64,000 bases of DNA from NCBI RefSeq assembly GCF_016432865.1, contig NC_067399.1, positions 1,674,001 to 1,738,000 of the forward strand, given 5' to 3'. The number at the start of each line of letters is the position of its first letter. The first letter of the stretch is position 1. Positions 3,176-55,690 of the stretch are shown here, piece after piece. Source of the DNA: Antechinus flavipes (Eukaryota). The translations under genes and the position numbers were made by a program. The notes under the pieces were generated by a model. It did no database searches. It saw only the letters and a list, made by a program, of their open reading frames with translations, and had not been told where the DNA came from.

Positions 3176-3715
3176 NNNNNNNNNNNNNNNNNNNNNNNNN
3201 NNNNNNNNNNNNNNNNNNNNNNNNNNNNNNNNNNNNNNNNNNNNNNNNNNNNNNNNNNNNNNNNNNNNNNNNNNNNNNNNNNNNNNNNNNNNNNNNNNNN
3301 NNNNNNNNNNNNNNNNNNNNNNNNNNNNNNNNNNNNNNNNNNNNNNNNNNNNNNNNNNNNNNNNNNNNNNNNNNNNNNNNNNNNNNNNNNNNNNNNNNNN
3401 NNNNNNNNNNNNNNNNNNNNNNNNNNNNNNNNNNNNNNNNNNNNNNNNNNNNNNNNNNNNNNNNNNNNNNNNNNNNNNNNNNNNNNNNNNNNNNNNNNNN
3501 NNNNNNNNNNNNNNNNNNNNNNNNNNNNNNNNNNNNNNNNNNNNNNNNNNNNNNNNNNNNNNNNNNNNNNNNNNNNNNNNNNNNNNNNNNNNNNNNNNNN
3601 NNNNNNNNNNNNNNNNNNNNNNNNNNNNNNNNNNNNNNNNNNNNNNNNNNNNNNNNNNNNNNNNNNNNNNNNNNNNNNNNNNNNNNNNNNNNNNNNNNNN
3701 NNNNNNNNNNNNNNN
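3176..3715. other. Assembly gap (N run) next to a CT/GT low-complexity tract
   Basis: 540 N. Confidence 1.
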
Positions 3716-8788: not shown

Positions 8789-9064
8789 NNNNNNNNNNNN
8801 NNNNNNNNNNNNNNNNNNNNNNNNNNNNNNNNNNNNNNNNNNNNNNNNNNNNNNNNNNNNNNNNNNNNNNNNNNNNNNNNNNNNNNNNNNNNNNNNNNNN
8901 NNNNNNNNNNNNNNNNNNNNNNNNNNNNNNNNNNNNNNNNNNNNNNNNNNNNNNNNNNNNNNNNNNNNNNNNNNNNNNNNNNNNNNNNNNNNNNNNNNNN
9001 NNNNNNNNNNNNNNNNNNNNNNNNNNNNNNNNNNNNNNNNNNNNNNNNNNNNNNNNNNNNNNNN
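8789..9064. other. Assembly gap (N run) inside the putative EVA1A 3' UTR
   Basis: 276 N. Confidence 1.
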
Positions 9065-19164: not shown

Positions 19165-19705
19165 GCAGAGGGAGGGAGGGCCCGGGGCGGCTTCCCGAGC
19201 AAGGGGGTCCCGACAGAGGGAGGGAGGGCCCGGGGAGGCTTCCCGAGAAAAGGGGGTCCCGGCAGAGGGAGGGAGGGCCCGGGGCGGCTTCCCGAGAAAA
19301 GGGGGTCCCGGCAGAGGGAGGGAGGGTCCGGGGAGGCTTCCCGAGAAAAGGGGGTCCCGGCAGAGGGAGGGAGGGCCCGGGGCGGCTTCCCGAGAAAAGG
19401 GGGTCCCGCAGAGGGAGGGAGGGCCCGGGGCGGCTTCCCGAGAAAAGGGGGTCCCGGCAGAGGGAGGGAGGGTCCGGGGAGGCTTCCCGAGAAAAGGGGG
19501 TCCCGGCAGAGGGAGGGAGGGCCCGGGGCGGCTTCCCGAGAAAAGGGGGTCCCGGCAGAGGGAGGGAGGGCCCGGGGCGGCTTCCCGAGAAAAGGGGGTC
19601 CCGGCAGAGGGAGGGAGGGCCCGGGGCGGCTTCCCGAGAAAAGGGGGTCCCGGCAGAGGGAGGGAGGGCCCGGGGAGGCTTCCCGAGAAAAGGGGGTCCC
19701 GGGTT
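19165..19705 (+). repeat. 49-bp G-rich minisatellite, about 11 copies
   Basis: Unit ggcagagggagggagggcccggggcggcttcccgagaaaagggggtccc; units start at 19261 and 19310. Confidence 0.95.
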
Positions 19706-20744: not shown

Positions 20745-22285
20745 CTCCCAAAGGCCGGAGTGTCTGTCTCTCCCTCCCTTCTTCTCTCTCTGTCTCTCTG
20801 TCTCTTCCCTTCCTCCTCCTCCTTTTTCTCTCTCCCTCCCCCCTCCTCTTGTCTTCTTTCTCTTTTTCATCTCTTCTCTTGTCTTTTTCTGCCTCTCAGA
20901 ATTTCTCTTTTTCTCACCCTCTGTCTCTTTCTCTTGTTTTCTCTGTATCTCCGTCTCTCTCTCTGTATCTGTCTCTTTCTCTATCTTTTTCTGTATCTCT
21001 CTTTTTCTCTGTATCTCTCCCTGCCTCTTTTTCTCTGGATCTCTCTGTGTCTCTTTGTCTGTCTCTCTTTTTCTCTGCATCTTTCCCTCTGTCTCTTTTT
21101 CTCTGGATCTTTCCCTCTGTCTCTTTTTCTCTGGATCTTTCCCTCTGTCTCTTTTTCTCTGGATCTTTCCCTCTGTCTCTTTTTCTCTGATCTTTCCCTC
21201 TGTCTCTTTTTCTCTGGATCTTTCCCTCTGTCTCTTTTTCTCTGGATCTCTCTGTGTCTCTTTGTCTGTCTCTCTTTTTCTCTGCATCTTTCCCTCTGTC
21301 TCTTTTTCTCTGGATCTTTCCCTCTGTCTCTTTTTCTCTGGATCTTTCCCTCTGTCTCTTTTTCTCTGATCTTTCCCTCTATCTCTTTTTCTCTGATCTT
21401 TCCCTCTGTCTCTTTTTCTCTGGATCTTTCCCTCTGTCTCTTTTTCTCTGGATCTTTCCCTCTGTCTCTTTTTATCTGTATCTTTCCCTCTGTCTCTTTT
21501 TCTCTGGATCTTTCCCTCTGTCTCTTTTTCTCTGATCTTTCCCTCTGTCTCTTTTTCTCTGGATCTTTCCCTCTGTCTCTTTTTCTCTGGATCTTTCCCT
21601 CTGTCTCTTTTTCTCTGGATCTCTCTGTGTCTCTTTGTCTGTCTCTCTTTTTCTCTGGATCTTTCCCTCTGTCTCTTTTTCTCTGGATCTTTCCCTTTGT
21701 CTCTTTTTCTCTGGATCTCTCTGTGTCTCTTTGTCTCTCTTTTTCTCTGTATCTTTCCCTCTGTCTCTTTTTCTCTGGATTTTTCCCTCTGTCTCGTTTT
21801 CTCTGGATCTCTCTGTGTCTCTTTGTCTCTCTTTTTCTCTGTATCTTTCCCTCTGTCTCTTTTTCTCTGTATCTTTCCCTCTGTCTCTTTTTTCTCTCTC
21901 TCTCTCTGCATCTGTCTCTTTCTCTCTTTGTCTTTTTCTCTCTTTTTCTGTATCTCTCTTTTTCTCTGTATCTTTCCCTGCCTCTTTTTCTCTGTATCTC
22001 TCTGTGTCTCTTTGTCTGTCTCTCTTTTTCTCTGGATCTCTCTGTGTCTTTTTCTCTCTGTCTTTCTCTCTTCATGTGTCTCTTTCTCTCTATCTCTATA
22101 AGTCTCTGTATCTCTTTCTTTCTCTGCGTGTCTTTCTCTCTTTTTCTCTGTAACTCTCTGTGTCTGTCTTTTTTTCTCTGTTATTGCTTTCTCTCTTTCT
22201 CTTTGTCTCTCTTTTTCTCTATATCCCTGTCTCTCTGTATCTCTTTCTGTCTCTTTCTCTTTTTCTCTGTATTTCTCTCTCTCCC
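20745..22285 (+). repeat. 1.5-kb pyrimidine tract with a core 28-bp array (ctggatctttccctctgtctctttttct)
   Basis: Read directly; period 28 from 21131 to 21159. Confidence 0.95.
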
Positions 22286-25590: not shown

Positions 25591-27399
25591 GTGAGCAGGC
25601 TCTGCAGTCAGGGGATAATCTGGGGGGAGCTGGAGGCACTGGCTCCCCTTGTCCTCCAGGCTGGGTGAGCCCCTCTGCCTCCAGGACTCCACAAGGGTTT
25701 TCTTGTGACTTCGAGCCTCCGCAGTGCAAGGGGCCTGGAGCGTGGCAGGCTAGTGTCTGAGCCTCCCTCCCCCCAGCTCTCTGGAGTTGGGGAGAAATGA
25801 ATTCTAGGTGATGGGGGGAGTGTGAGGGGGCCAATTCCCCCAGTGCTCCATCCTGGGAGTGCCAAGGGCCCCCCCATAGAACATTCATGGTGCTGGGTCT
25901 GAGCCCCACGGCTTCTGGGAGCCCCCTCCCCCAGCAGGCCCCTCACACTGTGGCTCTGGACATGAGGGCAGGAGTGACTAGAGGTCCCTGGCTGTGTCAG
26001 GGGCGGTTGGACGGAGACCACGTCCTGCCCCCACTTCTGTTTCTCCCCTTGGGCTTTGGCACGGAAGGTAATCTGCCACAGTGACCGCTGCCAGGAGGGC
26101 CCCGGGAACAGGTCTGAGTACACGGGGACTGGAGAGGCGCCGGACTCAGCAGCTCCACCAAGTGCTTCATGTTCTCAATGGTCAAGTGTTTGCTTTCCAG
26201 GAGAGCATCATGGGAGCCGCGGCCTCGCGTTTGAAGCCCTTGTCTGCATTCTTGGAAACCGTTTGTATTCTAGGTGTAACTGGGCTCATCCAGAGTCTGC
26301 TGGGCCGGGGCCTGGGGGGCAACCTCGGGAGTTCCCCGTGGGGAGGGGCCCACGGACTGGTTAACAGCCAGTCAGAGACAGAGACTGTGGTTAAGAAATG
26401 AGGAACTGTCCCCGCCCCATCTCCTCTCCAGAAGGAAGAAACCCTGGGAGCTTTTAGGGATGGGAGAAGTGCTCCCTTTTTTTGTTCTAATCGGCACTGA
26501 GCCACTTGACAGAATCCCAGCCCATGCTGGCGAAAGGCCCCAGAGCTGCAGAGTTCGCCCACTGGCTAAGAGCCCCTACCCTCATTTTGCCTTGTGATGG
26601 CCGGGAGGTCCCCCCAAAACAACTTTGTCTGGTAGGGGCGGGACCCTCTCAGGACCCCTTGGGGCGCCAGCATTTCCTCTGTCCCACCTAAGGAGAAGCC
26701 GGTCCACCTCACGTGGTGGTGGCGTTCCACCCAACCTGGGACCCTGCTGACGGGGACGGGCTTCTTCCGCGGGCGGTTCTACATTTGGTCTAGCTGTTCT
26801 GGAAGGGCCGAGCCCTATAAAAATGGGGCCCTGGAAGGGGGAGGAAGGTTAGAGGGGGCCAGGGACTCTTGGGTGAAGGGCCCTTGGCTCGGACCTCTGC
26901 CCCAGGCTCTCACTCTAGTGGGATAAGTTTAATTTCCATGGGGGGAGGGGCAACACGGACACTGGAGACGCTAAGTTTTAGATATTTTTCCGCAGTTCCA
27001 CTCTGGGCTCAAGAAAAGTTCCCGAAAAGCCTCCGGCCCCCATTCTGATCTCATGTGCTTATCCACCCCCAGCTGGGTCCCTCTCGGTGGGATCTGAAAC
27101 TCCTTGTTCTCCAAGGAATGAGGGTTTGTAGGAGAGATTTTCTCTCTCTCTTTTTTTTAATTAAAGCTGCTGATTTTCACAACATCTTCATGGATAATTT
27201 TTCAGCACTGACCCTTGCAAAACCCGGTCCAACTTCCGAGAAGGCAGATAGTCCGATATGTTAAACATGTTTTAATCTATGGTAAGTCCGATGTATGTGA
27301 ACATCCATCCAACAGCCTCGCTGCAGAAGAAAAATCTGATCAAAAAGGAAAAAAGACGAGTAAGAAAACCAAAGGCCGGTGAACAAGGACAGAGAGAGG

Positions 27400-28600
27400 A
27401 GAAAGCTGCGCCGCGGCCACGTTCCGTTCCCACAGGCCTCTGGGAGAGAGGTTTTTCTCAGGAAGGATGAAGAAGAACCGCGGCAACGATTGCAACAAGG
27501 CAGGTCTGTGCGGCTCCGGACACGGCCGGGATGTGCCGGGACCCGGGCTCGGATCGGGGCCAGGCCGTCCCTTCGGGCACAAGGGACAGAACAGGCTGGG
27601 CCAAGAATAGAGACGCGGGGGCCGCTGCCAGTCCAAGGGCAGTGGGGTCCAAAGGCCGGAGGCAGGGGTGGGAGTGAGAGGCCGCGGGGGAGGAGTGTCT
27701 GAGCGCTGGGCCGGGACCGGCTCACGGGGGGGAACGGCGGCCCCTGACGTCACAGGGCGCTGTCCAGAGTTGGCTGGAAGTTGGGAGGGAGGCCGGAGCG
27801 CCCTGTTCTCTCTTTCTGAGCCCCGAAGCCTGTGGGACCGACACCAGGAAGAGCCGGACGGCTGGGGACCCCCGGGGCCTCTCCCACGCTCCGAGCCTCC
27901 CCACGTCCGAACAAACTGTTCTCCGCCCACCAGGGACGTCTTCCCGTGATAGACCAGGGACTGGGCTGGGGGGGAAGGGAGGGGAAAGGGGGGCTCCCCA
28001 CCTAAGAAGGGTCATCGCCTGAAATTTCATCCAAAGGGCTTGAACCCGAAAAGGAGGAGAGGGACAAAAAAGGCCGACGTGGAGGCACCCGCAGGCCGCC
28101 CCAGTGAGGAAAGGAGATCGGCGAGGGCCCCGTGAGGCCCCTGAGCCCTTGGTTTAAGAAAAGTCAGGGGCCGAGAGCCCGAGCTGTTCCAACAATCCAG
28201 GCGGGAGGCAGGGCAAGACCAGCGAGAGAACCTCCCCCGGGAGCGGGACCCCCCAGGGGCGCCGTCGTCGCTGCGGAATGGAAGCCGCGAGCCACCGAGG
28301 GCTCTCTGCTCCCGGAGAACAGGCCCGCGAGCCGGCTCCAGCCTAGCTTTCCTCATGCTGCAGCCCGGGAGGGGAGGGGGCTCCGAAGGAGAGCCTGGGA
28401 GGGGAGAGGCGGGGCACAGACGGCCCGCGGGAGGGTCTGCAGAGCCGTGTGCTGGCCTGGGCGCTCCCACCAGCGCCACAGCGAGAAACGGCAGCGCGCG
28501 TCGGACGGGCCGAGGAGGACCCTGGAGCTGCCGCGGGACGAGACCCGGCCCCGGGGCCTGCTGCCGAGAGCCCCGCTCCGGGGCGCCCACAGAGCCTGGC
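27400..28600. promoter_or_regulatory. CpG-rich segment with a full CRE palindrome TGACGTCA (27745-27752)
   Basis: CpG density and motif visible; target gene unknown. Confidence 0.4.
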
Positions 28601-28777
28601 CCCCAAGGGGACTTATGGAGAGCTCACCCACGGCAGGCGCTCCCAGGGCGGCCAGGAAAGGGACCCAGGGACGCTCGAGGTCCAGGACCACCTGGCCTGG
28701 CGTGTCCCCCTCAGAGAAGGGGCTGGACACTGGGAGCAAAGAGAGGAGGTAGCCCAAAAGAACCGCCAGACGGGCCC

Positions 28778-29301
28778 CTCCCCCACCTGGCAGCCCCCCT
28801 CCCCCACCTGGCAGCCCCCCCCCCCCCCTGGCAGCCCCCCCCCCCCGCCTGGCAGCCCCCCTCCCCCGCCTGGCAGCCCCCCTCCCTTCTGGCAGCCCCC
28901 CTCCCCCACCTGGCAGCCCCCCTCCCTTCTGGCAGCCCCCCTCCCCCACCTGGCAGCCCCCCTCCCTTCTGGCAGCCCCTCTCCCCCCACCTGGCAGCCC
29001 CCCTCCCCCACCTGGCAGCCCCCCTCCCCCACCTGGCAGCCCCCCTCCCTTCTGGCAGCCCCTCTCCCCCCACCTGGCAGCCCCCCTCCCCCACCTGGCA
29101 GCCCCCCTCCCTTCTGGCAGCCCCCCTCCCCCACCTGGCAGCCCCCCTCCCCCACCTGGCAGCCCCCCTCCCCTCTAGCAGCCCCCCTCCCTTCTGGCAG
29201 CCCCCCTCCCCCACCTGGCAGCCCCCCTCCCTTCTGGCAGCCCCCCCCCCTTCTGGCAGCCCCCCTCCCCCACCTGGCAGCCCCTCTCCCCCCGCCTGGC
29301 A
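28778..29301 (+). repeat. About 19-22-bp C-rich minisatellite (cctggcagcccccctcccccca / ttctggcagcccccctccc)
   Basis: Read directly; lies about 500 bp upstream of the MRPL19 ATG. Confidence 0.95.
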
Positions 29302-29479
29302 GCGTCTCCGGCTCTCTGGGGGTCCCAGGGCGGGGTCGGCCCGCACCAGATGCTGCTCTTAGGTGACTCCCCGTTGGCCATTTGCAGCCTCTGTCCCCAT
29401 CAATCTAAAGGTCCTTCTCCGAGAGAGGAACAAAACAAAACAAAAGCAGAAGAGCTGCCTCCTCAGGTAGTGAGCTCCC

Positions 29480-29830
29480 CACCCAAACGGAGGCTCAAGG
29501 TGCGGGCCGGACCCGCAGCCACGCTCCCCTCAGCGGGACCCGAAGTGCGCGCTCGCAGGCTGCCTTCGGGCGGAGAACCCCCCGTTCCCCCTCCCCCGTT
29601 CCCCCTCCCCCGCCCCCCGCAGTGCCCTCCGATGGGGGGCGCTCGGCCGCAGGGACTACGCGGGACTGGGGCTCCGGCTTCTTGCGCAGCAGCGCCCCCA
29701 ACTGGCCGCTAACCCGATGGAGTTAGTCTGGCGCCGCCTTCGCGGAGAGCGGGATTTGGCCCTCGGAGGCCACCGTCCAACCAGTCACGTGCCGCGCTCT
29801 TCTTCCCAATCTAGGAAACATGGCGGCGCC
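29480..29830 (+). promoter_or_regulatory. MRPL19 CpG promoter with E-box GTCACGTG (29784-29791) and a YY1-type AACATGGCGGC overlapping the ATG
   Basis: Motifs read directly from the sequence; both are typical of nuclear-encoded mitochondrial housekeeping promoters. Confidence 0.7.
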
Positions 29831-31102
29831 CATGAGCTTGGCTGTCGCTCTCCGTCTCCGCCTCGGGGCCGCGCCCCGCGTGCCCGCCTACCGTAAGACC
29901 TAGGGGGGAGGGAAGTGGGGTCACCCGAGCCCCCCGACTGCCAGGGTCCTGCCCCGCCCCCCCCTCACGCAGGACCTTTGCCCCGCAGGCTCCCTCTCCA
30001 GCCCCGGGGGCTTCCAGCCCCCCCCCAAGCCGGTCATCGTGGAGAAGCAGCAGGAGCCGGAGCCGGAGCCGGAGCGCAGGTGAGGGGCGGCCGGGGTCCC
30101 CCAGCTGCGGGGTTAGAAAGCGGTCCTGCGGCCCAGCGCACCCACCGGCTTTGGCTTCCCCAGGTTCTTAAGCCCGGAGTTCATCCCTCCCCGGGGGCGC
30201 ACGAAGCCGCTCAAGTTCCAGCTGGAGCGCCAGGACATGCTGCGCCGGAGGAAGGTCCTCCCCATCCCCGAGTTCTACGTGGGTGCGTGGGGCGCGGGGG
30301 GAGGGGGGGGCGGAGGGGCGGGGGAGGGGCGGCCCTGACGCCTTCTCCTCCCCCGCAGGGAGCATCCTGGCGGTCACTTCGTCGGACCCTCACACCAAGG
30401 GCAAAACCAGCCGCTTCGTGGGCATTTGTATCCAGAGGTCGGGGAGCGGCCTGGGGGCCACCTTCGTGCTGCGCAACACCATCGAGGGCCAAGGTGGGCG
30501 GCTCCCAGCGGAGCCCTGTGGCGTGCCCCCGGGGCTCAGCGGGGGGGGGGGGGGGCGGGCCTTGGGGCTCCTGGGGGCCCCTCCCCCACCCTGACTGCTG
30601 CTCCTCCCCCCAAGGCGTGGAGATCTGCTTTGACCTGTACAGCCCCCGCATCCAGGAGATCCAGGTGCTGCGCCTGGAGAAGCGGCTGGACGACAACCTC
30701 ATGTACCTGCGGGACGCCCTGCCCGAGTACAGCACCTTCCCCCTGGACATGAAGCCCGAGACCCTGGACCCGGGCCAGGAGGTCCCTGTGAATAAGGTGG
30801 GGGCCGGGCCTGGGGAGGTCCTTGGGGGGCCACGGGGAGGGAGCCGGCCGGGCCCCCCTCACGCCGCCCTGTCCCCCCAGCTCCAAGTGCGCATGAAGCC
30901 CAGGCCGTGGTCCAAGCGCTGGGAGCGCCCCCAGTTCCGCATCCAGGGCATCCGCTTCGACCTGTGCCTGAGCCCGGAGCAGCTGCAGGAGGCGCAGAAG
31001 TGGGCCCGGCCCTGGGAAGAGTTCGACATGATGAGGGAGAACCGCACGGCCCGGCTGGAGGCCAAGATCTGGCAGGAAGTGGAGGCCGCCCGCAAGTCCT
31101 AG
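29820..31102 (+). CDS. MRPL19: MRPL19 mitochondrial ribosomal protein bL19m, 273 aa; exons 29820-29892, 29989-30079, 30164-30282, 30359-30493, 30615-30796, 30881-31102
   Basis: Spliced ORF of 822 nt, all introns GT-AG and phases consistent. Peptides [99 protein letters not shown] and PWSKRWERP match recalled MRPL19. The N-terminus is Arg-rich and acid-free, like a mitochondrial presequence. Confidence 0.98.
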
Positions 31103-31171
31103 GGCGCCCGCCCGGCTCTGGGGGCTCAGAGGCTTCTGGGGGGGGCTCAGGGAGCACGCACCGAGCTGTAC

Positions 31172-31185
31172 AATAAACATTTATT
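31172..31185. terminator. Bidirectional polyadenylation signal: AATAAA(+) 31172-31177 for MRPL19, AATAAA(-) 31185-31180 for GCFC2
   Basis: Sequence aataaacatttatt lies in the 117 nt between the two stop codons. I found no other hexamer nearby on either strand. Confidence 0.85.
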
Positions 31186-31219
31186 AAGCACCGACTGGCT
31201 ACAGGGACAGGGGTGGGGG

Positions 31220-34200
31220 TCACCGCGGCCCGTTCAGGCAGGCCCTCAGCCGCTCCAGCCCGTTCCTCTCCACGAAGGCTCGGGCCTGCGCCGCCGCCCT
31301 CATCTCCACCAGGAGAAGCACCATCTCTCGCACTTCGGACCTGGGGGCAGAGGGGTCTCAGCGGGGCACACACACGTGCCCCCCCCAGCCAGGGCCCCCC
31401 GGCTCCAGCACTCACCCGAGCTCGTGGTCATGCAGCTGCTGGGCCGCCCGCACCAGCGCCAGCACCAGGTTGGCCAGCTGGGGAACGGGGGGCCCCGCGG
31501 GGTCCCCGCCGAGCCAGCTCTGGGGGAGACTCTCCACCACCTGGGGGGCCACACACCTGTCACCCAGGCTCTCCTTCCTGGGCCCCCCACCTCACTCCCC
31601 AGGCGGTGGTTCTCTTCCCTTCCTCCTCTGCAGCCCGCCCCCTCCCTCAGCTCGGCCCCCCCCCCCACAGACCGCCCCCTCCCTCAGCTCGGCCCCCCCC
31701 ACAGACCGCCCCCTCCCTCAGCTCGGCCCCCCCCACAGCCCGCCCCCTCCCTCAGCTCGGCACCCCCCCCCCCGCTCACCCCACGGTACTTGGCGGCCAG
31801 CCCCGGCCCTGGGCATGTGCTGGAGAGGCCGATGACCAGGTAACGACTCAGCAGCTTGTCCAGTGCCAGCTCCCGCAGGGCGCCCTCCGGGACCAGGCCC
31901 TCCCACAGGACCACGTTGCCCAGGAGCTGGAAGCGGATCAGAGGAGGCCTGGGCGGCCGCGCCCTCCTCCCCCTCTGCCCCCACCCCGGATCCCTCGGGC
32001 CAGGATGCCCCTTCCCCCCCATTTGGGAGCCATGGCCCATCAACCGGAGGCCAGAACCCCACCCCACCCCCCCCACGCGGGGGACCAGGCCGAGGGTCCC
32101 TCACCTTCACGGCCAACTGGAACTGCCGTTCCTGGAACCTGGAGTGCGGGGACTCTCTGTCCTCCAAGACCCTGATCACAGGAGCAAACAGTGAGCCACC
32201 CCCCGGCCAGCCCTACCCCCACCCGTGATAAAGTCTGGCGGCTCCTGTGGGCACAAAGGTCAAGACAGAGACAAAGACGGCTGGGGGCGTGAGCAAGAGT
32301 GCGTGTGTCTGTGCACGTGTGTGCGGGACCGGGGGCGTGTGCGTGTGTAGGGCCATGTGTGCACATGTGTGTGGGACCGGGGGCGTGTGCGTGGGGGGCC
32401 GTGTGCGTGCGTGTGCGGGACCGGGGGCGTGTGCGTGTGCACATGTGTGTGGGACTGGGGGCGTGTGCGTGCGTGTGCACTGTGCACCAGCCAGGACCCC
32501 ACCGGGCCCCAGAACCAGCGCCTGGCGGCTTGTGATCCCAGAAGGGTCATTTCCCGCCTCTTTCTCAGTCGGGGGGGGGGGGGGGGACACAGGGAGGCAG
32601 GAACCGCTCGGCCTCTGAGGTCCCTTCTGCCTCAGACTTCCGGGAAATGACGGGTTTCCTCACGAGCCCTGATTAAGCGCCTGCTGTGTACTGGGCACCA
32701 GGCCCGCCGCGCTTTCCCGGGGAAGGTGCTTAATCCTGGAGGGAAGGGGGAGTCAGGACAGGGGAGCTTGAGTTTGGGGGGCTGAGGGAGGAGAGGCTGG
32801 AGGTCCCCAGTGCAGACGGGAGGGGCCCTTGTGAGGGCAGCCAAGGCTAGCCCCGCACCCCCCGGGACGCGCTCTGAGCGCCCTCTTCACCCGTGACGGC
32901 AAGAGAAGGAATCCTCTGAAAGGCGCCTTAGAGCATCTCAGGTTAAAGCCGCGCCGGGCAACGGCCGCCGCGCTCTCGGACCTTCGCCGTCGTCCTCGCT
33001 TTCAGAAACAGAGACTAATTACAGTAAAACTGTATCTGAAAAAGGGGTTCTGGTGGAACCTGGAGGAGTCCAGCAGAGCTGGTAAGTGGAGGCCCCAGTG
33101 TAGACAGCCCTTTCCCGGGAGCCGCTAAAGCCACAGGACGAGGATGACGGAGGGAGCACGTGGAGGATGAGGGAGGGGAGGAAAGGAGAAGGGGGGCTCA
33201 CGGGGAATGGCCGCCGCTTCTTCAGTAAAGCACAGCGGGGCAGGGGCTGAGCCGGGAGCCCCAGGAGGGTCGGAGAAGTGCCGGCGCAAGGGGGGATAAG
33301 GTTGGGGGAGGGAGACTGGGGGCCACTCCTCCTGCGCCCCCTCACCTCTTTGGATAGAGGGGAATAAAGACGTCATCCTCCACCGCCTTCTTCAGCCTCG
33401 AAACGACCGAGTCCCTCAGCTCCTGGAGTCACAGGGGAGACCTTGACCCTTTCAGAAGGCCCTGATCGCAGCTCGCGCCCCCCAGCCCCGCTTCCTGGGA
33501 CCTTCACCTCGTCCTAGGCCGAGGGAAGAGGCGGGAGCCCGCCCCCGGCCGTATCCCACCCCCAACTCACAGCCTGACCCTGAGAACCCAGACGGGCTGT
33601 CCCCTGGGACCTGAGCTTCTCTCCCTTCCCGTCCCTCTGGCCTCTTGAGCCCAGGTCCTGCTCTGTGCTCTCCACGGTCCGGCCAGAACGTCCCCCGCAC
33701 AGCCTCCGTGCCCCGACCTGTCCGCATCCCGAGCTCCCCCGGGGCAACAAGGACACCCTGCGTCCACCATGACCCCAAAAGGCCCAGGCACGAAGCCCAC
33801 CCACCTGCGTGGCGTGACCCTTCCTGCCCCTCGGAGCTGGGCTCAGGCTGAGGACCTCCCTGCAGCGCTCCACGAGGCTTCTGGTCTGCGGCGTGGACAA
33901 AGGGTCCCAAAGGAACTGGACAAACCCTGAAAGAGCCGGGCTGAGAGTTGGCCCGGCCCTGCTCCCTCCAGGAGTGCTGGACCCATTCACGGCCGGGACC
34001 TTTAACCTCCAGAGGGGCCTGGGGGCGTCTGGTTCATCCCCTCCCCATCCCTATCACCAGAGGATCAGACTCCGGGCACGTTGGGGCTAAGAAGGGAGGG
34101 AACTAACCAATGCCCCGGAGCAGAGTCCGGAACAAAAGGGGGACACGGGAAGGTGGGAGGAACATGCTCTGAGCGGGTCCTGTAGAAAGGGCATCCCAAA

Positions 34201-37200
34201 TGAGCTGTTCCTCAGGTCTCCAGGGGCACCCCGACCACCCCCTCGCCTTGGTCCCTGCAAGGGAGCTCAATGCAGCCCAGCGGTATCCAAGGCAAGAAGG
34301 TGCCTACCTGCCCTTGGCTCCGGCCCCACCTTGGGCGCCTCCCTTCCAGAAAGTCTCTACTCAGCAGCCAAAAAGGAGCCACCTGAGCCCACGGACCCAC
34401 CCCCACAGCTCTGTCCCTGCCCGAGACGTGGGCTAGACAGCGGGGGGTCATCCCGGTCAATGCCAGCGGCAGCCAAGGGCACGGGCTAACGCTTCAGAGA
34501 CATGCCCTGGCTTGGGAGCGGGGGACCCCAACTCTATTCGAACCCCAAGGATCCGACAGACAGCAAGAGGGGAGAACCCAGGTCGGCTGAGGCCCAGGAT
34601 CCTGGGGTCCCAGGCCGACGGCCGGCCTCCCCTCAGGAACCTCGCCTGCCCTGCAGCCGGCTTTCTAAGAGAACCCCCGAGAAAGGAGGGGATACAGGCC
34701 ACTGACTCAATGCCACCTGTGGATCCCTGTGCATGTGCTGGGAACAACAGAGTTCTCCGAATCAAGACAGAGTCAGTACCCGTGATGTGAGGAAGGACGG
34801 TCTTGTCCAGAGCAGCTGGCAGGATCTCCTTGTCAGGGCTGTCTCTCTGCACCACCGCCCCGCTGTTGGCAAACTCCTCCAGGGATTGGAACCAGGGCAT
34901 CCGCTGCAGACTGACGCAGTCCGGCTGCAGAGGAGACAAAATGTGAAAAACACCTGTCCTCAAGCAGAATCCCCCCAGCTGCCCCAAGGCGCAGATCAAT
35001 GCCCGGCACAAAGCCTGGAGCAGCAAGGCAGGAGGAGCACGTCCCAGCCCGGACTCAAACACTCCTGCCACTTCTCCTAGCTCATATCCTCACGGGTAAA
35101 GTGGAAACAAAAAGAATCATTCTGACTCAACATGAAGCCAGAGCATGCTTATCAGCTCTCCTCCAGCTCCCAGGTCCAGAGCTGAGCACAGCCCTGCAGG
35201 TGGGGCCCTCGCACAGAGGATGAGGCCTTCAGGTGGGGCCCCTGAATGCTGCCACGTCCTCCCCAGCCCATTCTGGGGATCGCCCCCTCCTCACTGGGCC
35301 TAGTTTCTCTCCATAGTCTCATCATGCCATTCTTCTTGGTCAGTGAAGCAGTCAGTAAACACTGATTAAGTACCTATGATATGTCAGGTGCCGTGTGGGG
35401 AATACGATGAGAGGCAAAAAAGACTCCTTACCCTCAAGGACCTCAGTTTAATGTGAAAAACACATACACAACTAAAATAAGCTACATAAATGGGAAATGA
35501 AGAGGGACCGGGACAAAAAGGAGGCGAAGAAGGAAGGAGAGCATTCTGAGTATGGGAGACAGAGAAAAGGGAAGGTCCTGTTTGTGAGAGTGGGACCATT
35601 GGATCCAATTGTATATGGTAGGAAATGTAAGGTATAAGAAACCTGAAAAGGTAGCAAGGGCTAGGCTACAAAGGACTTTGGAGGCCAAGCAGAGCATTTT
35701 GTTTTTGACGCTGGAGGCAATAGGAGCCATTCAGGTTTACTGAGAAGGGGGTGTGACATGATCAGATCAGTGCTTTAGGAAGATTAATTTGGCATCTGGA
35801 TGAAGAATGGAATACAGGGGAGAGAAACTGGAAACATACTTCTCAACCCCCCGCCAGCAGCTGCTGCCATAGTCCAGGGTGAAGGAGAGAAGGGGGCATG
35901 TGGCAGAGGTGCTGCAGAGGTGAAACGGACCAGAGATGCTGCAGAGATGAAACTGACCAGAGAAGTGCAGAGGTGAAACGGACCAGAGAAGTGCAGAGGT
36001 GAAATGGACTAGAGATGCTGCAGAGATGAAACGGACCAGAGAAGTGCAGAGGTGAAATGAACCAGAGATGCTGCAGAGATGAAATGGACCAGAGAAGTGC
36101 AGAGGTGAAATGGACCAGAGATGCTGCAGAGATGAAACGGACCAGAAAAGTGCAGAGGTGAAACGGACCAGAGATGCTGCAGAGGTGAAATGGACCAGAG
36201 ATGCTGCAGAGATGAAACTGACTGGAGGTACAAAAGTGAAATCATTAGGCTCTGGTCCATAGTAGATAAGGGGGAACGGGGCAGAAAGCATGAGGAGCCC
36301 AGGATAGCTCTTAGGTTAAGAGCCTGAGAGACTGGGAAGATATTGGTGGCACAATAGATAGTATGTCAGGAAGACCTGAAGAAGAAGTTTCAGTTGAAGG
36401 ATGAGAGGGTGGAGGGTCAGAAGTCAGATGGCAATGAAGAAGAGAATGAACAGAAAGGGGGGTCCCTAGTATAGATAGCCTTCTCAAGGGATTTAGCCAC
36501 AAAAGACAAGAAAAATATCAGATGGCAATTAGGGAGGTGGGTGGACCAAAGACATGTTATTGAGGTTTGTTACTGACATATTTGTAGACAGGAGAGAAGC
36601 AGACAGAAGGATAGAGAGAAAATAAGGGGGAGAGGGATAAGAGAGGGTGATTTGTTGGAAAAAGGTGGATCGAATGAGATCCAGCTAGCAGAATTTGACT
36701 TGATAAGGAGGCACCTCTTTCTATGGGCTGGGGGTGAGCTCCTCAAAGGCACAGCCCATCTCCCTATGTCTCTGTCCTGCCATGTCCAGCAGAGAGCAGG
36801 CCCACATCAAGTGCTCCCCAGACTCCAAGCTGTCCCACCAGACTCATCTGAAAAGCCATCAAGGTCCATCTGTCACTTCTAGAATCAAATCAATCTCAGG
36901 CCTGAGGTCCCAGCCCCCATGCCGCTCTTGATTAGTCATTCAGCCCTGTTCACTATCCCGCTGTTCAGTGTCTCTGCCACAAAGAATCCTCTCCACCCTA
37001 TGGCCTACAAAGAATCCTCCCACTTGGGTTGAAGGCTCTCTAGGCCCTGTGTTTAAGGCTGGTAATCAGCACCTCCTCTCCCAGAACTCCTGGTTCTAGT
37101 CTCTGGGGTCAAGCAGACCAAGAACGATCACTTGTCCCATGGCAGCTCTTCAGATTTAGATTCAGAGGGTTCCACCTTTCCCAGAGCCTCTTCTCCTGCA

Positions 37201-47167: not shown

Positions 47168-47530
47168 AGTCGTCACGTACTGCGCCGGCGTGAAGCCGTG
47201 CCGGCAATGCCAATGAGACGCTTTCCGAAGGAAGCGCCTGCGCCCTGGGCCGCCCGCCGCCATTGGCCCGCGGCCCTGCCTGGCTCCACCCCTGCCCCGC
47301 CTTCCCGAGCCTTGGGGCCCCGCCCCCATTCTCCTCCGCCCCCGGGCCGGGGCGCGCCCGTCGGGGATGGCCGCTTCCCCGCCTTCGGCTCTGCCTGGAA
47401 GTGACCCGGCGGAGCCCAGGAGTGGTCCGGCCAACTCCCGCCGCCCGAGCCCCGCGTCTGGGCCCGCCTGGAACCTCCGCAGGGCCACCCCTTTGGCACC
47501 GTGCTGGGCGGGCGCACAGAAGGGGCCTAA
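46780..47530 (-). promoter_or_regulatory. GCFC2 CpG island and promoter (CCAAT, ETS and YY1-like motifs upstream; NRF1 motifs in intron 1)
   Basis: gccgccattgg near 47257, ggaagtg near 47398, TGCGCACGCGCA 46783-46794, GCGCATGCGT 46911-46920. Confidence 0.7.
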
Positions 47531-47682
47531 TAAGTACTCGTGGACCCCCTGTATGGCTCAGCCTCCGGAGAACTTTTGGGTCCCTAAAGGGTGGGGGGGT
47601 CGGTGCCTGAGGCTGTTTCCTTCCCCCAGCCCGTGCTGTACCTGACCCATTAATAAGTCATGTGACCCTCCAGCTCCCCTGC

Positions 47683-48265
47683 TGCAAGGGCCCTTCTTTT
47701 TTTATTTTATTTTTCTTTGCAAGGGCCCTTCTTTTTTTTATTTTATTTTATTTTTCTTTGCAAGGGCCCTTCTTTTTTTATTTTATTTGATTTTATTTTT
47801 TTGCAAGGGCCCTTCTTTTTTTTATTTTATTTNNNNNNNNNNNNNNNNNNNNNNNNNNNNNNNNNNNNNNNNNNNNNNNNNNNNNNNNNNNNNNNNNNNN
47901 NNNNNNNNNNNNNNNNNNNNNNNNNNNNNNNNNNNNNNNNNNNNNNNNNNNNNNNNNNNNNNNNNNNNNNNNNNNNNNNNNNNNNNNNNNNNNNNNNNNN
48001 NNNNNNNNNNNNNNNNNNNNNNNNNNNNNNNNNNNNNNNNNNNNNNNNNNNNNNNNNNNNNNNNNNNNNNNNNNNNNNNNNNNNNNNNNNNNNNNNNNNN
48101 NNNNNNNNNNNNNNNNNNNNNNNNNNNNNNNNNNNNNNNNNNNNNNNNNNNNNTTTACTTTATTTTTTTTTTGCAAGGGCCCTTCTTTTTTTATTTTATT
48201 TTATTTTTTGCAAGGGCCCTTCTTTTTTTACTTTACTTTATTTTTTTTTTGCAAGGGCCCTTCTT
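47683..48265 (+). repeat. About 38-40-bp T-rich minisatellite (tgcaagggcccttcttttttattttattttatttttt) spanning an N gap
   Basis: The same unit occurs on both sides of gap 47833-48153. Confidence 0.9.
47833..48153. other. Assembly gap (N run) inside a minisatellite
   Basis: 321 N. Confidence 1.
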
Positions 48266-48449: not shown

Positions 48450-50290
48450 GTGTCCACTAGAGCGCTGGGTTTAGACTTAGGAAAACCTGATTTCAAATCC
48501 AGACTGTTGGGAGCTGTGAGACCCCAGCAGGCCTGTCCCGCCTCCGTGCCCTGAATTGTAAGGTGGGGGTGGTAAGAATGGCACCGGCCTTCCCAGGTGC
48601 TGGCCGTAGTTCTCAGCCTAATGCAGGAAACACCCTGCAAAATGCTGCGCGAAAAGAAGATCTAGCCTGGGAAAGGGACGGTCCAAGCGCTGACAAGGAG
48701 AAAAGGCTTCCCCTAGAAGGAATCTGGGCTGATGTCAGGCGGCGAGGAGGGCGGGGGAGAGCAGAGTCAGAGAAAAAGCCCTAGAGTCAGGGGAGGAGGA
48801 GAGAGAAAGGACTATGTGCCAGGCCCTGTACTCAACCCCCCACAGACAGCGCGTTGGGAGGTAGGGGCTAAGAGAGGCCCCATTTTGTAGTTGGAGAGAC
48901 TGAGGCAGAGATGGGGAGGGGGCTGATAATGGATGGACGTGGGGAGGGGAGGAGAGAATGAGTCCCAATATCCCTCAGCACTAGGAGGGAAGGGAGTGAG
49001 AGGGAGGGTTGGGGGCAAGGGTCCTGCATCCTGTTTGGGACATGCTGGTGGAAATGCCCACTGATTAGCCAGTTCAAGTTTGAGAGGCAGGTGCAGATTC
49101 AAGGTTGGGCGTCGGCAGATTGGGGACGGTAAAGGTAGACGTGACAATCATCAGCACTGCTCCACCACGCCGGCTCTTCATGACACCATTTGGGCTTTTC
49201 TCGATCCTGCAGCAATCTGCCGTCGTCTTTTCCTGGTACAGATGAGGAAAGTGAGGTAAAAAGGTTAAGTGACTTTGCTCCGAAGTGCCTGGGGCCAGAT
49301 TTGAACCCAGGAAGACAACATTCTAACCACTGTCCCACCTACTGCACCATTATCAGGACAGAAATGATACTTAAATCCACAGGAGCTGATGAAATCACCA
49401 AAGGAAGTAGTATAGAGGGAAGAGCACAGGAGAGGATCCAGGACAGAGCCCTGCAGGTCACTGAGGGTCAGAGGGTATGACCTGGAGGAGGATCCGGCAA
49501 AGAAGACAGGTGAGTCCGAGGCAGCTCAGGAGGTCACAGGTCACGGGTCACCTTGGAGAGAATGTTTATGGCAGAAGGATGAGGAAAGGGTTAAGAAGAG
49601 AGTTAGAGGAGAGAGTGTGAAGGCTGCTAGTGTAGATGCCTCCTTGGGGAGTTTCCCTACAAAGGGCAGAGGAGAAAGGATATTTAGCAGGGATGCAGTG
49701 GACAAAAGAGCCTTTTTTCAGGATTAAGGAGCTGAAGGCCTGTGGGGAAGAAGCCAGTGGAGGAGGATGGAGGGAAGATTCTAGTAGGACCGGATTCAGC
49801 ATAGAATGGCCTCTGGTGCAGGAAAGGTTTGCTTTGGTAAAAAATAGAGTCATTTCTCCTCATGAGGCACAGGAAACGGCACAGAAGGAACCTGAACGCT
49901 ATGAGATGAGGAGGAGAGGAGAAAAAGGAGCTCTCTTTGAAGAGCCTCTTTTTTTTCAGTAAAATAGGGGCAAGCTTCTGGGGCAAGAAGGTGGGACTGC
50001 AGGGAGCCGGGCCAGGTAGGAAGGGCTGCATTTATTCGTTAGTGCATTTGCGTCCCCAGGAATTAGCCCATTTGTTAGCCCTCTGGTGCTACGGGAGACA
50101 GACCAGATGCAAACGTGGAGCTTAGTGTGCTCTCGGACATATACTAGTCATGTGGTGAGCAAGTGAGTAAAAGCCTGGGTTTCCTCCCCTATAAAACAGA
50201 CCATAACCGCGCCTACCTCCCAAGGTCACAGCTGCAAAGTGGTGAGCACAGTGTCTGGCTCAGAGCAGGCGTTTAATAAGTGCTTGTTTG
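48450..50290. mobile_element. Cluster of MIR-type SINE and L2 relics (MIR about 48450-48570, 48790-48910, 49230-49330, 50130-50290; L2 about 49340-50030)
   Basis: Core-SINE patterns such as acagatgaggaaagtgagg...ttaagtgact...gatttgaacccagg and gcctgggtttcctcccctataaaac. Confidence 0.65.
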
Positions 50291-52799
50291 CTTCCTTTTC
50301 CGCTTCCATGTGAAACTGTTCGCTCAGCATTTTGCTTCCCTTCGAAAGCAGCGCCCGAGCCTTTCCCGCCAGCAGCGCCACCTGACCTTGGGAGGGTCAG
50401 GAGGAAATGAGGTATTTCTTGCCCTAGATTATCCCACCCCGGCTTGCTCCATGTGGCCGCAGATACTTCTGGCTGTCAGTTAGCACTGACGTGTTATCCG
50501 GCATCGCCTGTCAGTCAGCGATCACAGTTTCTGAGACTAATAAGCAACAAGCGTGAGATGCTTAAAGTTGAAGCAGGCACAAAACAAAATTGGGGGTCCG
50601 CCACTTGACCTAAAAATACACCTCTGGAAGGTTCTCCCCCCCACACCCCTCACCCTGAGTTTTGTCCAGGGAATTATGGGTACTATATCTGTGTACAAAG
50701 TCAGAACTGGACCACTCTTCCACTCTACCTTTAAGCCATAAAATGAGCAGATCAGTGACATGAAGCACCTGGTCTCTCCTATAATTTTACCTTCTTGCAT
50801 GTGGTTCTTTCCTAATTTCTTTTGGACTTAGCCCACTTTAATTGCAATTATAATAAACTTGGCCCCTTGACTTGGAGCTGAATCGAGCCTGCAAATGGCT
50901 CCGGTTGTGAGCCCCAACACCAAGACAAGATGATCAGCTCCAGCGTGCTCATGACATTCGTCATTCTTTCCCTTGAAAAGTCCACAGCTGTGAAAATCAC
51001 CTCCTCCCAGCAGGGCCCAGCATCCGGCTCCCAAGTCCCAGAACTCCAGCGCCACGTTCCTGCCGCCTGATGTTTAGGTCACGATTGCTCCTGGGGAGGG
51101 TGGAAGAAAGATAACTCCTTTCCTCTTCTCCCTGGAATTCCTTCCGGGCGGGGCCACTTGCCCTTAAGGCCTGAAAGACCTTGCCTTGGAATGACAAAGG
51201 ACATCTGAAGGCCGCCAGCCGCCGTGAGTGCCGGGCCCTGTACTCCCACCGAGCCTTCCCTTCCTGCTCCCACCGAATAGGAGGGGATTTGGGAGACAGG
51301 GCACGCCTCGTGTTGGGAGAAATAACTTGCTCTGGCTGCTCCATCTGCGTGGGATTGAGCCTTTGCTAAGGAACCGCGTCTGTTGCCTGACTGTTAAAGA
51401 AAGAGAGACTGGTGGGGGTGCGAAAGCCGGTGTCAGGAGAATAGCTACCCACAGGCTGCTCTTGTGATTCTCCTCTGCTGGTACGGGGCTGAGAGGGCCC
51501 CAGAGGGGGGCGAGGTTCTCCCGGGTTCCCCGATTACTTGCGAATTTCCCTAGGCCTGTTGCTGCGAGGACTGGCTCCTTACCAACCTCGCCTGTTGTGC
51601 TTTGGGGCCGACTGCAGGTTTCCACGACTTTTCTAACTTTCTGAAGGTTGGAAGATTTTTATCTGATCCATATCACCGATACAACAAGGTCAGAAAACAT
51701 AGGTTCTGTGTGTGCCCACATGGGGGCTCTGAATGAGGCAACCCAGAGGCGACTGCTCCGCGAGGGAGGGTACCTGTCTCTCCTCCTTCACCAGCAAAAG
51801 TCATTAGGGACTCAGCATTCTTTGGAGCCTTTGATTCCCATGCTCAGCGATGACAATGATTTTCCTCAGCCTAAAATAAGCGGACAGGCAATAGAGCTCC
51901 CCCCCCCCCCCCGCAAAAAGGCTCCCCGAAGCTTCTGGGGGAAGGTCACGGGTGCGGTCAGCTGCCTGCGCCCTCTTTGGCCGTCCCCAGGCCAGGCACT
52001 GGTCTTGTAGGGGGCCAGGAGAGCTGGATAACAACCGAATCACGGCCTTAGGAGGCACTCGACCCCAGCTGCCCAGGAGCAAAAGATCTGGAATGATCCC
52101 AGTCGTGCTCCCCTTGGGCCACTCTGGGCTCTGAAAGCCGGGTCCTTCCCATGGTTAGTGTGCAGGTAGACCCCATGACGCAGAGCAGTGGGCTGAGGGA
52201 TCCTGGCAGAGGAGTCATTGCTCTTTCTCGCTGGTTTGGAAAGGGCTGCCCTGCCAGGGCTCGTGGAACCCCGAGAAGGCCGCCCAGGAGCAAAGTGAGG
52301 GAGGCAGGGAATGGGGGCATCCCTCCCCCCCCGGCAGCTTATAAACCGGTGGAAGCCTGCGGGGACCGAAGAGACGCCCCCAGCACTGAGCCCCAGCGGG
52401 CGCTCCCTGACCCCAGGGACCTGGCTGGTGCTGGAGAGGGAGGAAGTCTGAGCAGCACGGGCTGAGCCATTGACTACAGCTCTGGCATCTTTCCCAGAGC
52501 CTCTGAAGTCCGGCACCAGGCTCCCCACCCAGTCCTTCCTAGAGGGCAGCCCTGGCCGTGTCCTTCACCTTGAACTTCAGCGGGCCGGTTACCACTAGAA
52601 TATCCCTTTTTATGTCCTTTGGGGCGTGTGTCCTGTGACCTCTAACAATAATTATAATTAAAAATACAGTGAGTTTCATCCCCTTTTCACTTTACTGCTA
52701 ATTTTTTCTACAAACCACAATTTTTCTATTTAAAATGTCTAGGTTATTTTCGCAATTGCAGTGTCGGGGCAGCCTTAAAGCACCACAACTGTCTGCCCG

Positions 52800-55609: not shown

Positions 55610-55690
55610 TCCAGAAGCATTTCTAAGCGCCTCCTATGTGCCAGGCCCGGGGGTAGGAGCACAAGAAACAGAAAGACCCATGTGGGGGTC
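55610..55690 (-). mobile_element. L2 3' tail fragment
   Basis: aagcatttctaagcgcctcctatgtgccaggc. Confidence 0.6.

What the first reader, a model, noticed from the sequence alone, without database searches (positions are those of the whole stretch)
31103..31219. MRPL19 and GCFC2 share one bidirectional polyA element that looks like a fossil L2 tail
Seen: only 117 nt separate the two stop codons, and caataaacatttattaagcacc provides AATAAA on both strands 2 nt apart. Its reverse complement, gtcggtgcttaataaatgtttattg, is almost the recalled L2 3' terminus gtaggtgcttaataaatgtttattg. Established: L2 3' ends are a known source of polyA signals in both orientations. Inference: a 25-bp transposon remnant terminates both housekeeping genes, forcing their 3' ends to overlap by about 30-50 nt and leaving both with UTRs of about 100 nt or less. 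The rest of the L2 appears deleted or GC-eroded while the dyad is retained, which implies selection.
Basis: partly seen in the sequence, partly recalled or inferred. Interest (0 to 1): 0.7.

Follow-up and report, generated by a model that had tools for sequence, protein, structure and literature searches.

The report
Shared two-way polyA signal from repeat tail
Two housekeeping genes that run towards each other in a marsupial genome are separated by only 117 bases, and the gap holds one small mirror-image "end of message" signal derived from an ancient mobile-element tail; this is a neat, well-conserved example of two known phenomena, not a new kind of element.

Summary
MRPL19 (+, stop 31100-31102) and GCFC2 (-, stop 31220-31222) are convergent and 117 nt apart. 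The dyad AATAAA-CA-TTTATT (31172-31185) is unique in the window. It is the only canonical poly(A) hexamer on either strand for 2.2 kb (+) and 3.9 kb (-).

The window matches Antechinus flavipes MRPL19 exactly in the last two exons. The dyad block is 95.6% identical to Sarcophilus, like the coding exons (92-94%) and unlike the introns (61-73%). It also survives in koala, a second diprotodont and Dromiciops, inside otherwise poorly conserved 461-486-nt gaps. It is absent from the bat (4.7 kb) and echidna (1.35 kb) gaps.

A profile built here from dispersed L2/MIR-type tails, with the dyad loci left out, hits the locus in the same orientation in every marsupial (koala E 1.9e-5, Dromiciops 7e-4, window 0.03). 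The repeat's sense strand is the GCFC2 strand. L2 proper cannot be told from MIR.

Use of the site by both genes is inferred from anatomy, conservation and one RNA contig that bridges both 3' ends. I class it as a new member of a known kind, of moderate interest.

The parts
30611..30796 (+). MRPL19 penultimate coding exon (start approximate)
   Evidence: Pfam Ribosomal_L19 E 7.5e-6; tblastn of Antechinus, Sarcophilus and Sminthopsis MRPL19
30881..31102 (+). MRPL19 last coding exon with stop TAG 31100-31102
   Evidence: All aligned residues of the last two exons match Antechinus flavipes P0127; 92% identity to Sminthopsis and Sarcophilus
31103..31219 (.). 117-nt stop-to-stop spacer that holds both 3' UTRs
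   Evidence: Orthologous spacers are 120 nt in Sarcophilus, 104 and 115 nt by annotation in two didelphids, and 461-486 nt in diprotodonts and Dromiciops
31153..31164 (-). GU-rich stretch (reads ucggugcgugcu on the - strand), the candidate downstream element of the GCFC2 site
   Evidence: Read. The GU-rich character is kept in Sarcophilus, koala, Dromiciops and the second diprotodont. Function is inferred
31167..31170 (+). TGTA just upstream of the + hexamer. The same bases give the first CA (31168-31167) downstream of the - hexamer
   Evidence: Read. Invariant in all four aligned marsupials
31172..31177 (+). AATAAA for MRPL19 (antisense to the repeat tail)
   Evidence: It is the only canonical + strand hexamer from 27160 to 33363
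31178..31179 (.). Centre dinucleotide: CA here and in Sarcophilus, TG in Dromiciops and the second diprotodont, CG in koala
   Evidence: An ancestral CpG decaying on either strand is the simplest reading (inference)
31180..31185 (-). AATAAA for GCFC2 (the repeat tail's own hexamer, in sense orientation)
   Evidence: It is the only canonical - strand hexamer from 31185 down to 27271
31171..31192 (-). Recognisable remnant of an L2/MIR-type 3' tail
   Evidence: Profile built from dispersed tails with the dyad loci excluded: window E 0.03, Sarcophilus 0.05, Dromiciops 7e-4, koala 1.9e-5, same strand and same model positions. Flank shuffles with the dyad held fixed reach the real score 0-3 times in 1000
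31200..31203 (-). TGTA upstream of the - strand hexamer
   Evidence: Read
31210..31219 (+). G-run (ggggtggggg), the candidate G-rich downstream element of the MRPL19 site
   Evidence: Read. A G-run stands at the same place in Sarcophilus, Dromiciops (more than 20 G) and the second diprotodont. Function is inferred
31220..31340 (-). GCFC2 last coding exon, stop at 31220-31222
   Evidence: The orthologous CDS end is annotated in Sarcophilus and koala

Best explanation
The spacer between convergent MRPL19 and GCFC2 in this dasyurid (Antechinus or a very close relative) is a minimal shared bidirectional polyadenylation unit. Its core is the last roughly 25-40 nt of an ancient L2-type 3' tail, from an L2 or from a SINE such as MIR that carries the same tail. 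The tail lies in sense orientation on the GCFC2 strand.

The tail's own AATAAA (31185-31180, - strand) signals cleavage of GCFC2 mRNA. The T-rich run just 3' of it has become TTTATT, which reads AATAAA on the + strand (31172-31177) and signals cleavage of MRPL19 mRNA.

Each strand has a TGTA upstream and a CA 12-13 nt downstream. The - strand has a GU-rich stretch further downstream and the + strand a G-rich run. Cleavage is therefore expected at about 31189-31203 on + and about 31167-31150 on -, so the two mRNAs would be complementary over at least some 24-37 nt.

Shown here: the anatomy, the uniqueness of the dyad, its conservation, and the homology to the repeat tail. Inferred: that both hexamers are the main signals in vivo, and where cleavage occurs.
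For: 1. Position and lack of alternatives. The dyad is the only AATAAA/ATTAAA on either strand in the whole spacer in the window, Sarcophilus, Dromiciops and koala. In the second diprotodont contig L006 there is one extra ATTAAA on the + strand, 5 nt downstream of the AATAAA and within the dyad block. In the window the next + strand site is 2.2 kb on and the next - strand site 3.9 kb on. No common variant hexamer lies on the - strand across all of MRPL19.

2. Constraint. Against Sarcophilus, the block 31161-31205 is 95.6% identical. Coding exons are 92-94% and introns 61-73%. Across Dromiciops, koala, the second diprotodont and the dasyurids, only the block around the dyad aligns well. All dispersed L2/MIR-type tails found in the dasyurid loci have lost their AATAAA.

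3. Repeat origin. The profile of dispersed tails, with the dyad loci excluded, scores koala L007 5749-5714 at 21.3 bits (E 1.9e-5) and Dromiciops L003 7631-7594 at 16.3 bits (E 7e-4). The window scores 11.3 bits (E 0.03) and Sarcophilus 10.6 bits. All hits are on the same strand and register. Flank shuffles with the dyad held fixed reach the real score 0-3 times in 1000. None of the other roughly 130 AATAAA sites in the searched DNA reached these scores.

4. Literature. The last 50 nt of L2 and MIR are homologous. [quoted passage not shown] Koala and the second diprotodont still have TGTGTGG / TGTGTGG-like sequence downstream of the + hexamer.

5. RNA. Logan contig L006 carries a spliced MRPL19 CDS, so it derives from RNA. 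It runs through the dyad into the GCFC2 last exon and ends 3 nt past that exon's acceptor. This is as expected if the two mRNAs' 3' ends overlap or abut.
Against: The bridging contig is from another marsupial with a 461-nt spacer, and read-through transcription would explain it equally well.

The + strand lacks a classical U/GU-rich downstream element in dasyurids and has only a G-run. The repeat match in the window itself is marginal (E 0.03), so the case rests on the orthologues.

I had no Dfam or RepeatMasker and no printed L2 consensus. The profile seeds were recognised by me and by their likeness to the high-copy echidna Mon-1-type family. Didelphid DNA could not be fetched, so presence in all marsupials is not shown.
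Confidence: 0.6

Rival explanations
1. Only one gene (or neither) mainly uses the dyad. The other transcript reads on into its neighbour and is processed at a distal or non-canonical site, and the conservation reflects one-sided use or some other 3' UTR function.
For: No mapped poly(A) ends are available. The + strand downstream region in dasyurids is G-rich and not U/GU-rich. The RNA contig L006 is continuous across the dyad, which read-through would also produce.
Against: Both hexamers are intact in all five marsupial lineages read, while the centre dinucleotide varies freely. The nearest alternatives are 2.2 and 3.9 kb away and lie inside or beyond the other gene. Conservation is symmetric, with a conserved downstream block on each side.
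Confidence: 0.2
2. The dyad is an old, purpose-built poly(A) region, and its likeness to the L2/MIR tail is coincidence or convergence on poly(A)-site motifs.
For: Only 22-38 nt match. The window's own score is marginal (E 0.03). Part of any such match comes from AATAAA itself. No homology to the repeat body was found.
Against: With the dyad held fixed, the real flanks beat 997-1000 of 1000 flank shuffles in four lineages. Koala shares a 19-nt identical run (acacagtaggtgcttaat) with a dispersed copy in a GCFC2 intron. Koala scores E 1.9e-5. The roughly 130 other AATAAA sites in the searched DNA do not score. The block is absent from the bat and echidna spacers.
Confidence: 0.1
3. This is a naming rival and does not exclude the best explanation. 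The remnant comes from a MIR or another CORE-SINE that carries the L2-type tail, and not from an L2 element itself.
For: L2 and MIR tails are homologous over the last 50 nt (PMC2553571). Most profile seeds look like MIR further upstream. SINEs far outnumber LINEs. CORE-SINEs stayed active in marsupials (PMC4408412).
Against: The bases 3' of the hexamer (tgtttattgta) resemble the L2-like copies seen here (tgtttactgactg, window about 35350) more than the MIR-like ones (tgcttgt, ttctgcg). Nothing upstream of the tail matches a MIR body.
Confidence: 0.35

Closest known systems
Poly(A) sites derived from the 3' ends of L2 and MIR (Lee, Ji and Tian 2008, PMC2553571)
   Same: The last part of the L2/MIR tail supplies AATAAA and TGTA in sense. 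In antisense it lies downstream of a cleavage site with a TGTG element. Such sites make up about half of the conserved repeat-associated poly(A) sites.
   Different: Here one remnant serves two genes at once. The antisense strand has gained a full AATAAA that the dispersed tails lack, which makes a 14-nt dyad (a perfect palindrome with a CpG centre in koala).
Convergent gene pairs that share a polyadenylation region or bidirectional termination zone (Arabidopsis PMC3032780; yeast bioRxiv 10.1101/2022.11.02.514956 and PMC3900390). From my own knowledge: the back-to-back early and late poly(A) signals of SV40.
   Same: Two opposed transcription units end in one short shared stretch, with overlapping or abutting 3' ends.
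   Different: Those cases are in compact genomes. This one is in a 3-Gb mammalian genome, has a repeat origin, and has hexamers only 2 nt apart.
Mammalian tail-to-tail overlapping gene pairs (3'-3' cis natural antisense transcripts; for example PMC3787269)
   Same: The coding genes are convergent and their mRNAs are expected to be complementary at the 3' ends.
   Different: The overlap here is forced to be very short and is centred on the signals themselves. The overlap has not been measured.

Membership tests
L2-type 3' tail (L2 / MIR / related SINE tails) | Sequence homology to the last ~50 nt shared by L2 and MIR, including the AATAAA | tested here: met
   Profile of 8 dispersed therian tails plus the echidna Mon-1-type consensus, dyad loci excluded: koala E 1.9e-5, Dromiciops 7e-4, window 0.03, Sarcophilus 0.05, same strand and register. 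Flank-shuffle control: 0-3 of 1000
L2-type 3' tail (L2 / MIR / related SINE tails) | Homology continuing upstream into the L2 3' UTR/ORF2 or the MIR core, which would say which element it was | tested here: inconclusive
   Matches start only 22-35 nt upstream of the hexamer (model positions 14-50). Beyond that Dromiciops has a poly-C/G run, and dasyurids run into the GCFC2 stop codon
L2-type 3' tail (L2 / MIR / related SINE tails) | Terminal short tandem repeats of the TGAA type after the hexamer (recalled feature of L2 ends; seen here in bat copy L005 about 2090-2140) | tested here: inconclusive
   The window has tgtttattgtacagc and Dromiciops has catttattgtactgcatcatg. These give only a faint likeness to tgtttactgactg / tgaatgaa forms
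L2-type 3' tail (L2 / MIR / related SINE tails) | Call by a curated repeat library (Dfam/RepeatMasker) | not testable with these tools
   No repeat library is on hand. Rfam holds no such family, and the region gave nothing at gathering score
Canonical mammalian poly(A) site, + strand (MRPL19) | AAUAAA, upstream UGUA, CA 10-30 nt downstream, and a U/GU- or G-rich downstream element | tested here: met
   AATAAA 31172-31177; TGTA 31167-31170; CA at 31189-90, 31202-03 and 31208-09; a G-run at 31210-31219 only. Koala and the second diprotodont also have TGTGTGG-type sequence
Canonical mammalian poly(A) site, - strand (GCFC2) | AAUAAA, upstream UGUA, CA 10-30 nt downstream, and a U/GU-rich downstream element | tested here: met
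   AATAAA 31185-31180; TGTA 31203-31200; CA 31168-31167; GU-rich stretch 31164-31153, conserved in the other marsupials
Canonical mammalian poly(A) site (both strands) | Mapped cleavage sites with untemplated poly(A) tails | not testable with these tools
3'-3' overlapping convergent gene pair | The mature transcripts of the two genes share complementary sequence | tested here: inconclusive
   RNA-derived contig L006 from a diprotodont joins spliced MRPL19 to the GCFC2 last exon across the dyad. This fits an overlap of about k-mer length or more, and it also fits read-through

The most novel reading that the evidence does not exclude
A single palindrome with an ancestral CpG centre, born from one L2-type tail, has been the obligatory shared terminator of two housekeeping genes for the whole australidelphian radiation and probably for all marsupials. 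It has been kept while everything around it was deleted down to 117 nt. The forced antisense overlap of the two mRNA ends, or polymerase collision at one point, couples the expression of MRPL19 and GCFC2, a pair that has been reported as co-regulated in human (cited in PMC3509064).
Probability: 0.15. Interest if true: 0.6.

Novelty: new member of a known kind. Interest (0 to 1): 0.38.

Why it matters
This is a compact natural example of how a few bases of a dead mobile element can become essential. One remnant ends two genes, and selection has kept an all-A/T 14-mer intact in a 72% G+C subtelomeric domain where sister copies of the same tail have decayed.

It gives a small, well-defined object (about 60 nt) for testing how closely two opposed poly(A) sites can be packed, and whether a forced 3' overlap couples neighbouring genes.

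It does not change what is known about L2/MIR-derived poly(A) sites or about convergent overlapping genes. Other first-stage notes in this genome report similar back-to-back elements (s1-193748, s1-200993, unchecked), so the kind may be common.

Tried and rejected
I did not resend, trim or move the stretch, so there was no read-laying run and no RNA evidence from the window's own species. Because no reason was given, I sent no typed DNA from this stretch to the collection or paper searches. I worked by reference and locally.
- Look-ups without DNA. Monodelphis, wallaby, Gracilinanus, elephant and armadillo returned gene tables but no DNA. Sminthopsis P0002 was not on record. Didelphids are therefore untested.
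- Search for short RNA-contig products. A search with the MRPL19 last exon gave one unrelated hit.
- Echidna profile alone. The echidna Mon-1-type profile was too diverged (E 0.61 on Dromiciops). It was replaced by a profile of therian tails.
- Exact or near-exact copies. None were found in any locus with up to 7 mismatches over 28 nt.
- RNA structure or known RNA family. Folding z-scores were -0.3 to +1.2, and nothing in Rfam came near gathering score. I rejected this reading.
- Micro-inversion of the palindrome as the cause of CA versus TG. I dropped this once koala showed CG.
- Spliced protein models. Searches used single exons, or the window's own open frame 29915-31099, which reads through short in-frame introns, by reference.
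- Exclusions. No human sequence was fetched or compared. The N runs were left alone.

Full report
**What is there**

The + strand frame of MRPL19 ends at TAG 31100-31102. The - strand frame of GCFC2 ends at 31220-31222, which leaves 117 nt between them. In the middle lies AATAAA (31172-31177), CA, TTTATT (31180-31185). Both the 22-mer around it and the pattern AATAAA-NN-TTTATT are unique in the 64-kb window, with none expected in shuffles.

The + gene is MRPL19. Its penultimate exon hits Pfam Ribosomal_L19, and the best database matches are marsupial MRPL19. Every aligned residue of the last two exons matches Antechinus flavipes, against 92% for Sarcophilus and Sminthopsis. The window is therefore Antechinus or a very close relative.

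The - gene is GCFC2. The convergent neighbour of MRPL19 carries Pfam GCFC in six marsupials, echidna and a bat. The window's - strand has exons colinear with the echidna gene and one weak GCFC hit of its own. GCFC2 is the former C2orf3 (PMC4521290). One paper calls the human pair "head-to-head" (PMC3509064). In every non-human locus read here the pair is tail-to-tail. I did not look at human sequence.

**Is the dyad the poly(A) signal of both genes?**

The dyad is the only AATAAA or ATTAAA on either strand in the spacer of the window, Sarcophilus, Dromiciops and koala. In the second diprotodont contig (L006) there is one extra ATTAAA on the + strand, 5 nt downstream and within the same block. 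In the window the next + strand hexamer is at 33363, inside GCFC2. The next - strand hexamer is at 27271, beyond the whole MRPL19 gene. No common variant hexamer lies on the - strand between 29900 and 31219.

Each strand shows the usual layout (read):
- + strand: TGTA 31167-31170, the hexamer, CA at 31189-90, 31202-03 and 31208-09, then a G-run at 31210-31219.
- - strand: TGTA 31203-31200, the hexamer, CA at 31168-67, then a GU-rich stretch at 31164-31153.

This predicts 3' UTRs of about 90-100 nt for MRPL19 and about 55-70 nt for GCFC2, and an antisense overlap of about 24-37 nt or more. These are predictions only.

The one piece of RNA evidence is indirect. Logan contig L006 comes from an unnamed diprotodont whose MRPL19 is 95% identical to wallaby. 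It holds an intron-free MRPL19 CDS, then the 461-nt spacer with the dyad at 1282-1295, then the GCFC2 last exon in antisense. It stops 3 nt past that exon's acceptor. That is what an unstranded assembly would give if the two mRNAs overlap at their ends, but read-through transcription would give the same result.

**Conservation**

Against Sarcophilus, the block 31161-31205 is 95.6% identical. Coding exons are 92-94%, the left part of the spacer is 81%, and introns are 61-73%.

Koala, the second diprotodont and Dromiciops have spacers of 469, 461 and 486 nt. Only the block around the dyad, the GU-rich stretch to its left and the G-run to its right align with the dasyurid spacer. The dasyurid spacer therefore looks like the long form with about 220 nt removed on the MRPL19 side and about 130 nt removed on the GCFC2 side, the core being kept (inference).

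The two centre bases differ: CA in dasyurids, TG in Dromiciops and the second diprotodont, CG in koala. The simplest reading is an ancestral CpG, which would make a perfect 14-nt palindrome, decaying on one strand or the other. The free variation at the centre, next to two invariant hexamers, is what selection on the hexamers would predict.

The bat spacer (about 4.7 kb) and the echidna spacer (1,347 nt) have no such dyad and no detectable homologue of the block. In elephant and armadillo no GCFC gene was called within the 8-kb flank downstream of the MRPL19 CDS. The two didelphids have annotated spacers of 104 and 115 nt, but their DNA could not be fetched.

**Repeat origin**

The echidna locus carries about 80 copies of one SINE-like family whose consensus ends in ...cacagtaagcgctcaataaatacgattgattga. 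I take this to be Mon-1, from my own knowledge. Its profile picked out L2/MIR-type tails in the marsupial and bat loci.

Eight such therian tails plus the echidna consensus, with the dyad loci left out, gave a second profile. Searched against the window and five loci, it finds further dispersed copies and then the dyad locus, always on the minus strand and at the tail end of the model:

| Locus | Bits | E-value |
|---|---|---|
| Koala | 21.3 | 1.9e-5 |
| Dromiciops | 16.3 | 7e-4 |
| Window | 11.3 | 0.03 |
| Sarcophilus | 10.6 | 0.05 |
| Second diprotodont | 7.1 | not significant |

With the 14-nt dyad held fixed and the flanks shuffled, 0-3 of 1000 shuffles reach the real score in each of four lineages. 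The roughly 130 other AATAAA sites in the searched DNA do not score. Koala shares the run acacagtaggtgcttaat with a dispersed copy in a GCFC2 intron.

The repeat's sense strand is the GCFC2 strand. Its own AATAAA would therefore serve GCFC2, and the antisense strand would serve MRPL19.

This fits Lee, Ji and Tian 2008. [quoted passage not shown] Koala and the second diprotodont still carry TGTGTGG-type sequence downstream of the + hexamer.

No dispersed tail that I read has TTTATT after the hexamer; they show cttgt, tttact, ttctg and similar forms. The second hexamer is therefore a local acquisition. My own recollection of the L2 consensus (…aataaatgtttgttgaatgaa) would need one G-to-A change, but that consensus is recalled and was not checked here.

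L2 and L3 are said to have stopped moving more than 100 Ma in therians, while CORE-SINEs stayed active in marsupials (PMC4408412). With only 22-38 nt left, L2 proper cannot be separated from a SINE with the same tail.

**Other readings excluded**

The spacer has no unusual RNA fold (z-scores -0.3 to +1.2) and no Rfam family near gathering score.

**Verdict**

It needs these corrections:
- The tail is L2-type and cannot be assigned to L2 itself.
- The antisense hexamer is a local gain and not an L2 feature.
- The element is shown only in marsupials (three australidelphian orders).
- Use of the site and the overlap are not yet measured.

Repeat-derived poly(A) sites and shared poly(A) regions of convergent genes are both known. 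Other first-stage notes in this genome report similar elements (unchecked). I class it as a new member of a known kind.

**Limits I kept to**

No human sequence was fetched or compared. The N runs at 3176-3715, 8789-9064 and 47833-48153 were left alone.

Noticed in passing
window 29820-31102: The whole MRPL19 coding span is only about 1.3 kb here. It is 1.35-1.6 kb in Sarcophilus, Dromiciops, koala, wallaby and Monodelphis, against 5.4-10 kb in armadillo, bat, echidna and elephant. The last intron is 84 nt, in frame and without a stop, so the genomic sequence gives a 395-aa open frame (29915-31102) that reads through introns. The locus lies about 0.3-0.6 Mb from a chromosome end in Sarcophilus, koala and Dromiciops, in a domain of about 72% G+C.
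   Followed up: partly
L004 16340-16470 (echidna spacer): The echidna MRPL19-GCFC2 spacer holds an unrelated young Mon-1-type SINE in the same orientation (sense on the GCFC2 strand). Its AATAAA lies about 790 nt downstream of the GCFC2 stop. This may be a parallel use of an L2-type tail. About 80 copies of this family lie in the 24-kb locus.
   Followed up: partly
window 20904-22282: A polypyrimidine (TC-rich) minisatellite of about 1.3 kb, with 14/56-nt units and about 24-97 copies. It causes the extreme strand skew seen in the composition profile (GC skew -0.38, AT skew -0.68).
   Followed up: no
window 29000-29303, 19500-19702 and 31631-31769: G+C-rich minisatellites: a 21-nt unit x15 upstream of MRPL19, a 49-nt unit x4 at 99% identity, and a 34-nt unit x4 in the second-to-last GCFC2 intron (between the exons at about 31412-31552 and 31768-31932).
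   Followed up: no
window 32655-32719, 35343-35398, 47493-47554, 50221-50295, 55605-55657: Dispersed L2/MIR-type tails. All have lost their AATAAA (to AATCAG, AATAAG or AGAAAT) and gained G+C. Two have orthologues in Sarcophilus (L001 8689-8743 and 11659-11708). They contrast usefully with the intact dyad.
   Followed up: partly
L005 10763-26838 (Myotis brandtii): The called GCFC gene model overlaps the whole MRPL19 gene, whereas the exon homologous to the marsupial GCFC2 last exon lies at about 21541-21666. The model probably has a spurious or alternative 3' exon inside MRPL19.
   Followed up: no
PMC3509064: This paper describes human MRPL19 and C2ORF3 as transcribed head-to-head. Every non-human mammal locus read here has them tail-to-tail. 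I did not check this in human.
   Followed up: no
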